A stretch of 64,000 bases of DNA from the NCBI GenBank assembly GCA_965202585.1, contig OZ241826.1, positions 43,648,001 through 43,712,000 of the forward strand. Direction: 5' to 3'. The translations under genes were made by a program, and so were the position numbers. Source of the stretch: Thalia democratica. Taxonomy: Eukaryota. Positions 52,941-58,900 of the stretch are shown one piece after another. The notes under the pieces are model-generated. The model worked only from the letters and a program-made list of their open reading frames with translations. It had not been told where the DNA came from and did not search any database. The stretch's first letter is position 1, and every line of letters begins with the position of its first letter.

Positions 52941-55900
52941 ATGAAGGCTTTGGATATTGCATTAATCTTGTTTATAAAAACAAACATATCATTTTGTTTT
53001 TACGATGAAACACTAATAAAAGGATCTACAGGGCTAAATGTAGTTATGAGATGTTTGGAAAAAATAAAAAAATCAGGTGAAATTTATTATTTTTAGACTA
53101 TAGTTTAAATTATAAGAAAGTTTAAACTTTGGTGTTCTACAAAGTTCTTTATTAATGTGAAATATATGTTTAGGTAAAAAAATCAAAAAAACAAACAACA
53201 CTTCAAAGTCTGTTGAAAATATTTGCTTAATAAGTTTTATAAATAGATAAAATAAAATTGCATGAATTTGATAATATAAACATAACTAAAATGAAAATTT
53301 AAAATGTTAAGAATTCGCAATTAGACCTTGATAAGTGTACTTTTTTTTTAAATGAATAGTTTTTAAATGAAAAGGTGTAAGATATAGCTCAGAATTTTTT
53401 TTAAATGTTAAAAACCATTTATAATATTTTAAAGATTTATGAAAAAGTAATACATAGCATTTGTCGTTGAGAGTAGGCTATCAAATTTTTTAAATTTTCT
53501 AATTTAAAAGTTTTTCTAATAAAAACAAAACTTCAGTATTATTTTTTTACTATATGCAAAATATTTAATGTAACAAGAGTTTTTCATGTCCCCTGTAATT
53601 AATTTTCGTTTTAGTAAAAACAAAGTATGAAACATTTTTGGCGCTAGGTGTATTTTTACTTTAAAATTGAAAGTTTAGTTTTTAACATATTTAAAAGTTA
53701 ATTTTGAAATAGTTTTAGTACTTAAAGAAAAACTTTCAGAAATTGATAAAATAGTTTGGTTTTTCGTAAATAACTAAACTTTAAACGTTTCAAATTTAAA
53801 GTTTGTTTTTCTAAAAGAATACAGTCTAACTTTTATTATTAAAACCTTATTATCGTTTTAAGAAACTAATGAGTAGAAGGTTTAAAAGTTTTATGTTTAG
53901 GTATTTTTAGAAATGATTGGGAATTCACTAGAAAGCTTGCTTATATTCAAAGTAAGGACGGCGAAAGCAAAACAATAGACATAAATGGTGGTATTTGGAA
54001 GGTTTACGTTCAAATTTTATTTGTTGAACTACTTTTAGTCGATAAATAAACTACTTGTTTCAAAAGACTTTGTTTTGACGCTAAAAAACTTTTATTGTAC
54101 TTAATTTTGTATTATTTAGTTTATATTAAAAAAAAGATTGCATATAGTTTAACTTACAGATAGATGCTTGTTTTATTTAGTTTATTAAAATTTTACAGCT
54201 CTCTTATGATTAACTTAGTGTTTCTAAACTTCTTTTTTATATAAGATTTTATAAGAAAAGACATAAACTTTTATTTTCTTTTAAACATATCAAACATATC
54301 AACAAGTCACGTTCAAATATATAAAACTATACAAGGCTAATTATTAAAAATTTTGGATAATAAAATATTGAAGCACAAAAAATATTTACCTTTTTTTCAT
54401 AGTAAAAAAATTAATAAACTAATTGCTTTAAAACTGAGTCAATGAATAGTACTATGCTTTTATGAAAAATAACAAAAATCAAGTTGATTTAAATTAAAAC
54501 TTGGTTAAATTTATATTCAAATTACTTAATTTTAAAAGAAAAAAAAAACTGTCCACATTTTATAAGTAAACCACACAATTTTATAAAAAGGAAAATGAAT
54601 CAAGTAAATTCTTTTGGCGAGATTTTTCACTGTATTTATGATTGATTTTTTTGTTTATAAGTTAAAAACAGATGCATTAATAAGATCTCAAATTAATTAT
54701 AAAAACAGAAAATAGTAGTATAAAACTGATTTCTGTAGCAATTACTTTTTTAGCCTAAAAACTTTTATACTATAAAAACTCAAATATTTTTTAAAAATCA
54801 AAAATAAACTCATAGAAACATATTGGTATTAACTATTTAACTTTTTAAAGGTTGTTACTACAATACTAGTTTTTGTTTCCTTGTTTACGATACAGAATGG
54901 TTTTTAGGTGGCAAAGGAACAGTTCTTATTCACTAAAGTTTCAAAAACGTGTTATTCAAACAAGCTACGCAATCAAATACTAGAAAAGTTCAACATTAGT
55001 TGGGAGGAAGCTTTGTATGAGCATTTAGACATACCGCTGTATTCAGCTATCGCATCAAGAATGTACATTGAGATTTCGTGTAGAAGAATAAACATTCCAA
55101 AAGATTTAAAAGGACAAGTACTATTTTACTTAAAATTTTATTTTTCTATTAAATCTTTTTATTAAAATACTTTTAGATAAAACATACTATCTAACAAGGT
55201 TCTAATTATTGCAAAAATTTAAAGCAATTCTCTATTTTAGTTTGACTTCTGGAAAACTCACTTTGAAAACGTTACAGCATCGCATTATGCGCCAAAAAAC
55301 TATGAAGAGTACAAATTTGTTGACTCATTAATACCAGAAAGTAATTGTCTATCAAATATATTGTGCATGTAGTTTTTAAATTAAAAGACTTCAATTTTTA
55401 GAATGCAAGTTGGCATTAGACGAGTTGATATTTTTGGTAGACACTTCATGGAAAACAGTTGTTGGCACGATGTCAGCCTACAAAAGCTTTATTTTACGAA
55501 TTTTAGAACACTTACCTACAAGTGGTCTTAAACTTGGGGTAGCAAGTTTTTCTAAGGACTTAATTGTTAGCATTCTTAATATTGAATACAAATAAATTGG
55601 TTTAAACATAAGAATGTAAATAAAAATGGTTGTGTGCAATAAACAAATGTAAAATATGAAAAATTAAAATCTATTAGTAAATACTAATAATTTGTTTTTA
55701 CTATATATTGAACCACTATTTTACCTTTGAATCTAAAAAGTATGTTTAGATTAAACTTGATAACATCAAATTTAATAAACGAAATATAATTATAAAATCT
55801 AAATAAAAACTCCTTAACTATAAATTATTAAACTAGCAACTATTACATCTTTTTTTAAACAGAATACTTACGTTAATATAATATAATTTAATTCGCGAAA

Positions 55901-58900
55901 TAAATGTTTTCAAATTTTATTTTTTAGTAAAAATTGAAAAGATTATGTACAAATTATAATTCATACACGCAAGTGTTCAAAAATATAAACATGTAAAATA
56001 GGTTTAACCAACATGATTAAATTATTTATCTTTTACAGGTCAACTTTCCATTGAGTACTGTAAATTCTTCAGAAAAAGTAAAACTTTCAATAAATAACAT
56101 TCAAATGCATAATGAGGAAATAAGTGATGTACCAAGTGCCTTTAGTTTTGTTCTTAACAGTTTTACTTCTGAGGATAAAAAAGAAAATATTTCAACTGCT
56201 AAGGTAAACTATGCAATAATATTCAGCTAGCATTATAATAAGGTGTCTTAAAATGTAGCAAAAAAAAACTAACAGTAGTTCTTATATAAGTAGTACAAAA
56301 TATTAAATTATTAAACACAAATAAGAAGTTATAATATTTCTATTAAACAATCAAAAAAGGTTCAAGTGGTTTTTGTACTTAGTGAAAACAGCAAAATTTT
56401 GGATTCAGAGTACTTTCATGACTTCAGATCTAAAGGAAACAATGTAATTAGAGTTTATGTGGAAAATGGTAGATCGGTTAGAAACATTACACTTTTTTTA
56501 GAAAAAGTTTTTATACTAATATTTAATAGTTAGTAGTGAGTTTATATTTCTTAAAGTGTTCAAAAAAACTTACCACAAATTTAAGAAAATTTAACTTTGT
56601 TGTAAACTTTGATTTTAATTAAACTTGTTTCTTGTAAGTTAAAAAAAAGGTACATTGAGGTTTTCAAAATCGACATTGAAATTTTGTTGCTAAGTCTATA
56701 TAAAAGTTATAATTAAAAAAAATGTATAAAATTACTTAAACATTTCTCTAATTTGGATTATTAATCTTACTTAATATTTAACTTATCAATTTATTTTTGA
56801 TTATGCAGTTTGCTTAAATTTACAACAATCAACAAAATCAGTTTCTGTTCTTTCTATCAAAATCGTCAATGGTATTTTACTTATATTTAAACTTATATTT
56901 TATAAACTGCATTATCATACACAATATTATTTATAGAGTAACTTTCCAAAAACCATAAAACTTTCAATCGTGTAAATAAATATCAAAACTCAGGTAGAGC
57001 ATAACCAAACAGTTTCAAACAAAGTTTTTGTTGTTCCGAATCACAAGTATCTTTACCAACTTGAGCAACCTGCAGCCGAAGCTGTTTGTGAAAGTTTGGT
57101 TTTATATATACTTTTGTAACTTTTTCATTACCGAATAAACTTGTATTACAAATGTAGGTTCCTTTTTAATCCAAAACTTTACTGCATTCGAAAAAATTTT
57201 GGAGCCCGGAAAAAAGATTATTTTTGAAATTGCTCTATCATCAAGTTACTTAATAAGAATAAAGTCAAACATATCAGAAGTTTATGGGTACACATCGGAA
57301 GACGACTCTGTGCTGCCAGATTCTTCATTTTATCAACAAATGTTACTAGTTGTTTTTCTGAATGCTCTTATTGACTTAATAATAATGTAATATATGCCTA
57401 TCATAGAAAAACTTGTCCGAACTTAGTAAATTAAATGATCTTTAAGACACTAAACATATTTAATATGTGTCAACTTGCTTTAGCATTTATTAAAAGTCAT
57501 ATTTTTGTATTTTAAATGACTCTTTATACTTTTTTCTTTCTAGTGTTAATATGGTTCCGCTTTGTGAAAAATTATTTCTTTTTTTAATTATTATGTTTAA
57601 TAAAAATAAATTAGTTTAAAGTATTTAGCTTGAAACTTGCAAACTCAATAAAAAAACCACAAACACAGGTTAAATATCACTACGCAGTCTTCTGAATACG
57701 TGTTTACAAATTTTCTTATACTAACTGTTTCAAACGAAGGTAAGACCTGCGCGTCACTTACTGTTAGTATTGAAAAACCGGAAAATTTAGACAATGAAAA
57801 AGCTCAGCAGCAATTCATTCCAACAGGTTTACAAATTAATATTTAAGATAATGGAAAGGATTTAACTTACTATTCAACAGGTAAATACCAACCGAACTCA
57901 CTCATAGTAGTAGTTTCAAGTTTACTTGCCTTATTGCTCATCTTGATACTTTTTATGCGCGGTTGCCATAACAAACAGAAGGTTCATTCTCAGCACCAGT
58001 ACGCATTTAAGGTGAGAGTTTGTTTGTGATCTAGCTAAAATAAATTAAAGCTTTTAATTATGTTGATTCTAACAGGAAGACACTCCAAATGCAGAACAAA
58101 GCAAAAATAGGTGGGTTATTATTAGATTTGTTTAAAAGTAGTATATTATTTTTTCAAACAGCTCTAGTTTTATTTTATACTTAATTCTGGATGATTAAAA
58201 AGCTAATAGATTTTTAAAATAAAACAGAGACACTCGAAAAGTTAGCCCAGAGAGCCGAGCGTTGGACAAACAAGATATTTCAGATAAAGCTGAAAACTTT
58301 ACATCTGTTATAACAGAGAGTAGGCATTTTGAAGTTGATACTCAAGAAGACAAACAAGTGAAGACATCAGAAGAATCAGGTCACTACTCATCAGCGACTG
58401 ACATTTACAAAAATGAAGATGCGTTCTGCACTCTTCACGGAGTTGAAGCACGAAGAACTGCTGCACAAGAAACTACATCGGTGGAGCAAAAAAGTGTTGC
58501 AAGTAAATCTTTCAGCTTTGAAGTGTTTGAAAATACCGAGAGAGGTGAGAATTTACAAAACCGTAAAACGGTAATAAGTATTTGATTATTATATTTTTAG
58601 TAGACAAGTTAAATAATAAAAAGTGTATGATTTTTATGTTTTTAAATTTTATGTTAAGTAGATTATTTATTTAAAGTTACAGATGAAGAAATTGAGAATA
58701 GCTCTACTCAAGAAACGTTCGGGTTTAAAGAACAATCACAAAAACTTGATGCAGAATCTCAAGAAAGTTCTCTAAATACAGAAGACGACCAGAAACCTGT
58801 CGAAGTTTGTTATTTTGTTGGTTCTTTGCAAGGCCTTTTTAGCGATAAAAATGTTTGTTTCAGAAAGCTAATCATAAAAGCTATAACTTTGTGTAAATTA

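What the first reader, a model, noticed from the sequence alone, without database searches (positions are those of the whole stretch)
53901..55340. Extracellular lysozyme/lytic-transglycosylase-like domain with both catalytic motifs substituted (candidate pseudo-enzyme sensor)
Seen: GIFRNDWEFTRKLAYIQSKDG...NGGIWKV...FNISWEEALYEHLDIPLYSAIASRMY...IPKDLKGQFDFWKTHF. Recalled: this matches an uncharacterised invertebrate domain (consensus about 'FLRRIAYVESxDG...GGIWQV...GIxW...DLxxPLYS.LAARL...QAxYWK') whose ES and GxxQ motifs parallel SLT/goose-type lysozyme motifs I and II. Here E is replaced by Q (IQSKDG) and Q by K (GIWK). Inference: a hydrolysis-dead glycan- or peptidoglycan-binding module on a membrane protein, so a possible pattern-recognition or adhesion receptor. 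The fold family may derive from bacterial or phage genes.
Basis: partly seen in the sequence, partly recalled or inferred. Interest (0 to 1): 0.7.

Follow-up and report, generated by a model that had tools for sequence, protein, structure and literature searches.

The report
Dead lysozyme-like domain on membrane protein
This sea-squirt-type gene encodes a cell-surface protein whose outer tip is a relative of phage cell-wall-cutting enzymes that has lost all three conserved active-site residues, so it probably binds rather than cuts, and its family has no Pfam or NCBIfam model.

Summary
Coordinates 53901-55340 are exons 2-4 of a spliced + strand gene; exon 1 lies at 52941-53076. Together they encode a ~180-aa N-terminal domain, followed by a VWA domain, a stalk, one membrane helix and a long tail.

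The domain belongs to a large family with no Pfam or NCBIfam model. At least 405 mostly secreted eukaryote-type proteins belong to it. Named sources are a sea star, two snails and an annelid.

Models of the nearest relative (pLDDT 91) and of a phage member (pLDDT 95) match almost only lysozyme-like enzymes, with best Z of 8.1 and 10.5. Pfam register and profile-profile alignment place the family E on the catalytic Glu of MltE and Slt70, and GGIWQ on GLMQ.

New here: the family is homologous to phage family phrog_3108, of unknown function. Its phiKO2 member sits between a holin-like gene and the spanins. E, Q and a following D/E are invariant in 60 phage and bacterial representatives.

The window protein has Q, K and A at these positions; its nearest relative has Q, R and T.

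Loss of hydrolysis is well supported. Glycan binding is inferred. The scan's index lists only this same stretch, not other DNA.

The parts
52941..53076 (+). Exon 1: start codon, weak signal-like hydrophobic N-terminus, first helix of the domain (DETL..G..VV..C..KI).
   Evidence: ATG with an in-frame stop 18 nt upstream. The donor CAG|GTGAAA leaves one base, which completes GGT with exon 2. Collinear with P0003 residues 29-53 and with family columns M1, D22, T24, G31, V34, V35.
53901..54001 (+). Exon 2: motif I (AYIQSKDG) and motif II (GGIWK).
   Evidence: The family profile hits it at E 4.4e-5 in the whole genome. tblastn to P0003 residues 53-87 gives 51% identity.
53948..53950 (+). Codon CAA = Q62, at the family's near-invariant Glu. 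That Glu aligns with the catalytic Glu of MltE E64 and Slt70.
   Evidence: E in 128 and Q in 2 of 130 other domains. E in 60 of 60 phage and bacterial representatives. Register from Pfam SLT position 24 and hhalign. Unchanged in three runs.
53999..54001 (+). Codon AAG = K79, at the Gln of GGIWQ (aligned to GLMQ of SLT).
   Evidence: Q in 60 of 60 phage and bacterial representatives, and in 32 of 45 eukaryote-type representatives. hhalign register.
54908..55117 (+). Exon 3: central helices, including FNISW and DIPLYSAIASRMY.
   Evidence: E 6e-12. 44% identity to P0003 residues 87-163.
54911..54913 (+). Codon GCA = A81, at the acidic residue two positions after the Gln (family QVD).
   Evidence: D in 85% of eukaryote-type domains. 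D or E in 60 of 60 phage and bacterial representatives.
55241..55340 (+). Exon 4: last helices of the domain (FDFWKTHF ... KFVDSL).
   Evidence: Q149, W153 and F175 are kept at invariant family columns. Donor A|GTAATT, phase 1.
55402..55565 (+). Exon 5: start of the VWA domain. The MIDAS-like motif reads DTSWK (55440-55454), not DxSxS.
   Evidence: Pfam VWA E 0.0013, 19.5 bits, below the 23.8 cut-off on this exon alone. Collinear with P0003 residues 188-240, whose VWA domain scores 61.3 bits. The exon end is my reading of the only GT before the stop.
56039..56203 (+). Exon 6: middle of the VWA domain.
   Evidence: Collinear with P0003 residues 243-300. Acceptor AG and donor AAG|GTAAAC were read.
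56360..56506 (+). Exon 7 (ends approximate): later VWA strands (VQVVFVLSEN ... VIRVYVENG).
   Evidence: Read by eye against P0003 residues 298-345. No significant tool score.
57157..57342 (+). Stalk region between the VWA domain and the membrane.
   Evidence: tblastn to P0003 residues 373-431, E 0.004, collinear.
57901..57957 (+). Membrane helix (LIVVVSSLLALLLILILFM), followed by R..K.K. This gives a type I topology with the lysozyme-like domain outside.
   Evidence: Open frame 57847-58026. The hydrophobic run was read directly. P0003 has a matching helix at residues 505-530.

Best explanation
SHOWN. The stretch encodes exons 2-4 of the N-terminal extracellular domain of a single-pass membrane protein. 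The order is domain, VWA, stalk, membrane helix, long cytoplasmic tail. The domain belongs to a large family that has no Pfam or NCBIfam model and has the lysozyme-like fold. The solved structures nearest to it are GH23-type enzymes: SLT lytic transglycosylases, phiKZ gp144 and a GH23 chitinase.

The family is shared by phages, prophages and animals. In phages it is invariant at E-[ST] ... G-x-x-Q-x-[DE]. In phiKO2 it occupies the endolysin slot, between a 3-helix holin-like gene and the spanins.

INFERRED, strongly. The family is a glycan-strand-cleaving enzyme with that Glu as the acid catalyst. The window protein (Q62, K79, A81) and its nearest relative P0003 (Q, R, T) have lost all three positions, so they cannot hydrolyse. 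Thirty-three of 50 highly conserved family columns are kept, including G66, GGIW, W111, P122, S125, Q149 and W153. The domain therefore still folds.

INFERRED, weakly. Glu-to-Gln mutants of MltE and of the GH23 chitinase were crystallised with bound oligosaccharide. By analogy, the domain may hold a beta-1,4 GlcNAc/MurNAc glycan (peptidoglycan or chitin) without cutting it. The protein would then work as a non-enzymatic surface sensor or adhesion molecule. The VWA domain (MIDAS degenerate) would make protein contacts and the tail would couple to the cell interior.
For: Gene model and collinearity with the 880-aa relative.

Family size and consensus.

Fold:
- The P0003 domain model has pLDDT 91.3. 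Its best solved matches are MltE-E64Q (Z 8.1), gp144 (7.8), GH23 chitinase (7.8) and Slt70 (7.3). 49 of the 50 rows listed are lysozyme-like enzymes or alpha-lactalbumin.
- The phage member model has pLDDT 95.2. Fourteen chains score Z >= 8, the best at 10.5, and all 50 rows are lysozyme-like.
- After the family's own clusters, AFDB lists bacterial SLT proteins.

Register:
- The catalytic Glu of MltE and of Slt70 both fall on Pfam SLT position 24. So does the family Glu of P0004, in a sub-threshold SLT hit.
- hhalign of the phage profile against a 68-sequence SLT profile gives E 6.7e-5, probability 64%. The combined profile gives E 3.2e-4. Both align ES with ES and GxxQ with GLMQ.

Phage homology: phrog_3108 hits 38 of 44 members, best E 6.7e-20. 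tblastn of the sea-star protein hits phiKO2 Gp54 and Vibrio, Shewanella, Pseudomonas and Salmonella phages; a 636-kb phage matches at 43% identity, E 6e-25.

Lysis cassette: (spanin coordinates from PMC6139136, supplementary file 5).

Invariance.

The codons are confirmed in independent assemblies. The relative P0003 comes from an intron-free 3.2-kb contig.
Against: - No model of the window protein itself could be made, because a spliced sequence has no reference. The fold rests on a relative that is 44% identical.
- The sequence link to SLT is weak. No Pfam hit reaches its cut-off, and hhalign probability is at most 64%.
- Foldseek E-values against the PDB are all above 0.07.
- No member of the family, phage or animal, has a tested activity, so 'catalytic' is assigned by analogy.
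- Besides the three motif residues, the window copy lost other conserved positions (T71, Y73, D118, P141, and the Asn of YYN). The groove may be remodelled, and glycan binding may be gone too.
- No RNA run was found for this gene.
- The signal peptide is weak.
Confidence: 0.6

Rival explanations
1. The domain is catalytically dead and has also lost glycan binding. It would serve as a protein-protein interaction or purely structural cap on the VWA ectodomain, much as alpha-lactalbumin reuses the lysozyme fold for another job.
For: Many conserved family positions besides the three motif residues are changed in the window copy: T71I, Y73I, D118H, P141N and L55T. The clade of the window copy and P0003 sits on long branches, with a stem of 0.63 and tips of 0.8-0.9 against a median of 0.58. 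The VWA MIDAS motif is degenerate in both, so the whole ectodomain may have changed partners. Alpha-lactalbumin appears among the fold matches.
Against: The aromatic and glycine residues that recur across the eukaryote-type members (GGIW, W111, W153, Y124) are kept. Relatives in snails and an annelid carry chitin-binding CBM14 modules, which ties the family to glycan matrices.
Confidence: 0.3
2. The domain is still an enzyme and uses another acid, for example D65 of QSKDG, or a different chemistry.
For: D65 is conserved in 90% of eukaryote-type members. Some eukaryote-type members lack the Gln or the Asp yet keep the Glu, so the motif tolerates some change.
Against: The Glu is invariant in 60 of 60 phage and bacterial representatives and present in 128 of 130 eukaryote-type domains. 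It aligns with the single essential acid of SLT enzymes. D65 is not conserved in the phage members, which read ET.LG. From my own knowledge, Glu-to-Gln is the standard inactivating mutation in this fold; the PDB titles call Slt E503Q 'inactive'.
Confidence: 0.05
3. The gene is a decaying pseudogene or an assembly artefact, and the substitutions are noise.
For: No RNA run was found. It is the only family copy in the genome.
Against: The reading frame is open across at least seven exons with AG/GT borders. It is collinear with an 880-aa protein from an intron-free contig that shares the same Glu-to-Gln change. Thirty-three of 50 conserved columns are kept. Three runs from two samples agree at the codons, and all indels listed fall in introns.
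Confidence: 0.04
4. The resemblance to lysozymes is a chance likeness of a small helical domain.
For: The tool notes that Z of 7-8 is common for models with no clear match. Foldseek E-values are not significant.
Against: Almost every row in two independent wide searches is a lysozyme-like enzyme: 49 of the 50 rows and all 50. The phage member reaches Z 10.5, with 14 chains at Z >= 8. The sequence motifs align in register. The phage member sits in a lysis cassette.
Confidence: 0.02

Closest known systems
GH23-type enzymes: family-1 lytic transglycosylases (E. coli MltE, Slt70, MltC; phiKZ gp144), goose-type lysozymes and the Ralstonia GH23 chitinase
   Same: Same fold (Z 7.3-8.1 for the relative's model and 8.8-9.7 for the phage member). 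A Glu-Ser at the end of a helix is followed about 18-20 residues later by G-x-x-Q, aligned in register. From my own memory, not checked here, goose lysozyme reads GLMQVD with a catalytic Asp97 after the Gln, as this family reads GGIWQVD.
   Different: No Pfam SLT hit reaches the cut-off: best 17.8 bits against 21.3, in one member. The third SLT motif (AYNxG) has no counterpart; the family has PLYSALAARL and QAxYWKxYYN instead. The window copy lacks the Glu.
Phage family phrog_3108 (unknown function), e.g. Klebsiella phage phiKO2 Gp54 and Vibrio phage 2.096.O protein 37
   Same: Significant sequence homology over the whole domain. Same E-[ST] to Q spacing of 20 residues and the same C-terminal AAYWKKYYNT..G.G motif.
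   Different: The phage proteins are ~150-170-aa stand-alone proteins, or C-terminal modules of larger proteins, with E, Q and D/E invariant. The window domain is spliced, fused to VWA and a membrane anchor, and has lost all three residues.
Secreted eukaryote-type members, and domain+VWA+CBM14 proteins of Haliotis, Littorina and Owenia (P0128, P0129, P0004)
   Same: Same family. The VWA-fused snail proteins group with the window protein on the tree (support 90-94).
   Different: They keep the Glu (E-Q-D in 97 of 129 domains). They end in chitin-binding modules and have no membrane helix. Haliotis has an intact DSSSS MIDAS motif.
Non-catalytic peptidoglycan-recognition receptors such as insect PGRP-LC (from my own knowledge)
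   Same: By analogy only: a phage-type cell-wall hydrolase fold is kept in animals both as secreted enzymes and as a membrane receptor whose copy lacks catalytic residues.
   Different: A different fold (amidase_2, like T7 lysozyme) and a different bond. No homology, and receptor function here is untested.
Other inactive lysozyme-fold or glycosidase-fold proteins: human LYG1, alpha-lactalbumin, chitinase-like lectins
   Same: Loss of the catalytic acid with the fold retained. PMC11576321 reports that LYG1 and two sponge g-type genes lack the catalytic Glu and Asp.
   Different: Those are soluble proteins of curated families. This one is membrane-anchored, VWA-fused and from a family with no Pfam or NCBIfam model.

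Membership tests
ES...GGIWQ family (animal members plus phrog_3108) | Significant profile match over the domain | tested here: met
   Exon 3 scores E 6e-12 and exon 2 scores E 4.4e-5 against the family profile in the whole genome. Exon 3 alone scores E 1.7e-15 against a family protein. The spliced domain aligns end to end.
ES...GGIWQ family (animal members plus phrog_3108) | Conserved core columns (G66, G75-G76-I-W78, W111, P122, S125, Q149, W153) | tested here: met
   All are present. 33 of 50 columns conserved at 85% or more are identical in the window protein.
ES...GGIWQ family (animal members plus phrog_3108) | Motif residues E, Q and D/E | tested here: not met
   The window has Q62, K79 and A81. 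It is a member by descent, but not of the presumably active form.
Pfam SLT (PF01464) / CAZy GH23 | Score above the Pfam gathering cut-off | tested here: not met
   No SLT hit for the window exons. The best family member scores 17.8 bits against a cut-off of 21.3. One of 44 members hits at E 0.01.
Pfam SLT (PF01464) / CAZy GH23 | Lysozyme-like fold with the Glu at the end of a helix before a hairpin | tested here: met
   Tested on the models of P0003 and of a phage member, not on the window protein itself.
Pfam SLT (PF01464) / CAZy GH23 | Catalytic Glu present | tested here: not met
   Gln at the aligned position.
Pfam SLT (PF01464) / CAZy GH23 | Third motif AYNxG | tested here: not met
   hhalign places PLYSALAARL opposite it, without similarity.
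Phage endolysin (for the phage members only) | Gene lies in a lysis cassette with a holin and spanins | tested here: met
   In phiKO2, Gp53 has three hydrophobic helices, Gp54 is the family member, and the i- and o-spanin coordinates come from PMC6139136. In 32 of 49 other loci a small ORF with a membrane helix lies next door; no control was run.
Phage endolysin (for the phage members only) | Demonstrated cell-wall lysis | not testable with these tools
   No paper describing the family was found.
VWA domain (PF00092) | Pfam match and MIDAS motif DxSxS | tested here: inconclusive
   The first VWA exon scores 19.5 bits against a cut-off of 23.8. The collinear relative scores 61.3 bits. The MIDAS motif reads DTSWK here and DASLK in P0003, so the second Ser is not met.

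The most novel reading that the evidence does not exclude
An ancient phage-type cell-wall hydrolase family, with no Pfam or NCBIfam model, entered animals once and persists from sea stars and molluscs to tunicates as secreted enzymes. In the tunicate lineage one copy lost catalysis and became the ligand-binding head of a membrane receptor. This would be a GH23-fold counterpart of the PGRP receptors, tying recognition of bacterial wall or chitin at the surface to a cytoplasmic tail that another agent reads as microtubule-binding.
Probability: 0.22. Interest if true: 0.8.

Novelty: new variant of a known kind. Interest (0 to 1): 0.62.

Why it matters
Three things would follow if this holds.

First, hundreds of phage and prophage genes now called hypothetical (phrog_3108) would gain a likely role as endolysins of a lysozyme-like type that no Pfam or NCBIfam model covers.

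Second, animals would have one more family of cell-wall or chitin enzymes shared with phages. It would stand beside the g-type lysozymes, for which transfer from bacteria has been proposed (PMC12855814).

Third, the tunicate protein would be a natural Glu-to-Gln 'substrate trap' on a membrane anchor. That makes it a testable candidate for a new kind of innate-immune or matrix receptor in the closest invertebrate relatives of vertebrates.

Tried and rejected
- Pfam on the single exons gave nothing for the domain.
- A family profile against PDB sequences gave only a chance FF-domain hit at E 0.54.
- hmmsearch of the family HMM against three E. coli SLT domains gave nothing.
- hhalign against the single MltE or Slt70 sequences gave E 0.14-0.16; the Slt70 alignment was in the wrong place. 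Only profile against profile gave a usable register.
- Two further searches with P0003 for multi-domain relatives found three proteins and one protein. This is a limit of the word index, not evidence of absence.
- A scan of metagenome contigs for orthologues found none.
- Alignment A4 was too diverse to scan with.
- No RNA run holds the gene, so splicing rests on homology and splice signals.
- No second family copy was found in the genome. The weak hit L002 (E 0.027, with stops inside) is taken as chance.
- No SLT-family hit was found in the genome.
- Literature searches for the motifs, and for a phage-derived lysozyme of this type in animals, found no description of the family. Rusticalin (PMC6339383) belongs to a different, peptidase family.
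- NCBIfam has no model for the family.
- The window's own spliced domain could not be folded, because it has no reference and I did not type it.
Full report
**What is in the sequence**

The window is AT-rich animal DNA (GC 22-29% around the finding).

A further exon upstream, 52941-53076, begins with ATG and has an in-frame stop just before it. Its donor is CAG|GTGAAA, and it leaves one base that completes a Gly codon with exon 2. Its residues align with the N-terminal helix of the family.

Downstream, exon 5 (55402-55565) opens a VWA domain (Pfam E 0.0013 on that exon alone). Further exons are collinear with the 880-aa relative P0003, through the VWA domain and a stalk. A 19-residue hydrophobic helix at 57901-57957 is followed by basic residues.

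The domain is therefore the outermost part of a type I membrane protein. Another agent of this scan described the cytoplasmic tail. I did not test that.

**The family**

Exon 3 alone finds family proteins among 1.84 billion representatives at E 1.7e-15 to 2.5e-10.

A profile of eight domains finds at least 405 proteins. Most are ~190-aa secreted proteins on contigs of up to megabases, with no Pfam domain and almost no names. The named ones come from:
- a sea star (Acanthaster);
- two snails (Haliotis and Littorina);
- an annelid (Owenia).

AFDB clusters add fusions to VWA, death and chitin-binding domains.

Across 130 other domains the Glu of VES is E in 128 and Q in 2. The window has Q62.

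The genome holds only this one copy.

**Fold**

I could not fold the window's own spliced domain, since it has no reference. I folded its nearest relative instead: P0003 residues 24-190, which is 44% identical and carries the same Glu-to-Gln change.

That model is confident (pLDDT 91.3). An exhaustive structural comparison with 48,161 solved chains gave these best matches:

| Chain | Z |
|---|---|
| MltE-E64Q with chitopentaose | 8.1 |
| phiKZ gp144 | 7.8 |
| GH23 chitinase | 7.8 |
| Slt70 | 7.3 |

Of the 50 rows shown, 49 are lysozyme-like enzymes or alpha-lactalbumin; the lowest row, at Z 4.0, is an L,D-transpeptidase entry.

A second model, of a phage member, has pLDDT 95.2. It reaches Z 10.5, with 14 chains at Z >= 8, and all 50 rows are lysozyme-like.

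Foldseek ranks the same families first but without significant E-values. The uniformity of the lists, rather than any single score, is the argument for the fold.

**Do Q and K sit at the catalytic positions?**

Pfam SLT matches show that the catalytic Glu of MltE (E64) and that of Slt70 both fall on profile position 24. A sub-threshold SLT hit in family member P0004 puts the family Glu on position 24 too.

Profile-profile alignment against an SLT profile built from 68 E. coli and phage sequences gives:
- E 6.7e-5, probability 64%, for the phage half of the family;
- E 3.2e-4 for the whole family.

In both, ES lies on ES and G-x-x-Q lies on GLMQ.

The aligned ranges of the structural hits agree to within a few residues. 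In both models the Glu/Gln ends a helix that precedes a hairpin carrying the G-x-x-Q.

**The phage link**

This part is new here.

- A viral contig encodes a 462-aa protein whose C-terminus is a close relative of the animal domain.
- PHROGs family 3108, of unknown function, matches that protein. It also matches 38 of 44 family members, best E 6.7e-20.
- The sea-star protein finds cultured phages of Klebsiella, Vibrio, Shewanella, Pseudoalteromonas, Pseudomonas and Salmonella by tblastn. It also finds a 636-kb phage at 43% identity.
- At least 501 viral contigs and 70 bacterial genome loci carry relatives.

In phiKO2, the member Gp54 follows Gp53, a 101-aa protein with three hydrophobic helices and a charged tail. 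It precedes the i-spanin and o-spanin mapped by Kongari et al. (PMC6139136, supplementary file 5). That is the endolysin slot of a lysis cassette.

In 32 of 49 other loci a small ORF with a membrane helix is adjacent. No control was run for this, so it is only suggestive.

In 60 phage and bacterial representatives, each under 60% identical to the others, E, [ST], Q and an acidic residue two positions after Q are all invariant.

Neither Pfam nor NCBIfam has a model for the family.

**Tree**

The tree has 106 domains. The 45 eukaryote-type sequences lie on one side of a branch (SH-aLRT 94). They sit inside a well-supported group (99) with three viral or bacterial sequences. The remaining 56 phage and prophage sequences form the other half.

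This fits a single old transfer between phages or bacteria and an early animal. The root is only a midpoint, however, and I ran no AU test, so I name no donor.

The window protein and P0003 are sisters (support 97). They group with a three-repeat protein and with the VWA-fused snail proteins.

**Loss of the motif**

Among 129 eukaryote-type domains, 97 have E-Q-D. Several lack Q or D but keep E. Only the window (Q, K, A) and P0003 (Q, R, T) lack all three.

The shared Gln, in two proteins only 44% identical, argues that the loss is old and tolerated.

The rest of the domain is kept: 33 of 50 highly conserved columns are identical and several more are conservative changes. Some changes are not conservative, namely T71I, Y73I, D118H, P141N and the Asn of YYN. 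The groove may therefore differ from that of the enzymes.

Contigs of three DNA runs from two samples span the exons. They show no change at the three codons, two amino-acid variants elsewhere (E105K and R130K), and indels only in introns.

P0003 comes from an intron-free 3.2-kb contig of a JGI sample. Such a contig would fit a transcript.

**How it most likely works**

I commit to the following.

The family ancestor is a glycan-strand-cleaving enzyme of bacterial cell walls. In animals it may also act on chitin, given the recurrent CBM14 partners. The Glu is its acid.

The tunicate membrane protein cannot cut. I put this at about 0.9.

Whether it still binds a GlcNAc-type glycan is inference, at about 0.4-0.45. 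It rests on two things: the retained aromatic core, and the solved Glu-to-Gln mutants of MltE and the GH23 chitinase crystallised with bound oligosaccharide (titles).

The main rival is a change of partner to a protein, at about 0.3.

**Comparison and novelty**

In fold and motif register the domain works like a GH23-type enzyme. It is not a member of Pfam SLT, because the gathering cut-off, the catalytic Glu and the third motif are all not met.

It is a member by descent of the family shared with phrog_3108.

Dead lysozyme-fold proteins are known: LYG1 (PMC11576321) and alpha-lactalbumin. Receptors built from dead phage-type wall hydrolases are also known, namely the PGRPs (from my own knowledge).

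The kind is therefore known. Three things are new: the family, its tie to phages, and the membrane-anchored VWA architecture. I found no paper on the family. This does not prove that none exists.

Noticed in passing
window 55440-55454: The VWA domain's metal-site motif reads DTSWK (P0003: DASLK) instead of DxSxS. The Haliotis relative has DSSSS. Both modules of the tunicate ectodomain have therefore lost their canonical functional residues.
   Followed up: partly
L089 2558-3980 (Klebsiella phage phiKO2, genes 53-56): Gp54, annotated only as 'Gp54', lies between a three-helix holin-like Gp53 and the published spanin pair. It looks like an unrecognised endolysin of the same family as the window domain.
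   Followed up: yes
L086 162-4492 (IMG/VR contig, 31% GC): A 462-aa protein with the family domain at its C-terminus is followed directly by an open frame of more than 980 aa with no PHROG match. It may be a virion-borne lysin. It is among the three viral or bacterial sequences nearest the animal clade on the tree.
   Followed up: partly
L138, L152 (613-aa ORFs); L215, L228, L198 (344-659 aa): Some viral and bacterial members are modules of much larger proteins rather than ~160-aa stand-alone proteins. The BFVD best match is a 1021-aa uncharacterised phage protein.
   Followed up: no
whole genome G000: The genome shows no second copy of this family and no Pfam SLT match in six-frame searches. 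No canonical enzyme of this family, and no g-type lysozyme, was detected. Short exons limit the sensitivity of these searches.
   Followed up: partly
window 54983 and 55059: Two amino-acid variants between samples fall inside the domain: E105K in run X3 and R130K in runs X1 and X2. R130 is conserved in 96% of the family.
   Followed up: no
window 53452-53543 (intron 1): Contig word depth jumps about a hundred-fold in all three runs, so this is a high-copy repeat inside the intron.
   Followed up: no
P0001 (518 aa): This protein has three tandem copies of the domain. All keep the Glu, but the second and third have H/T and R/T at the Gln and Asp positions. It is the closest group to the window/P0003 pair on the tree.
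   Followed up: partly
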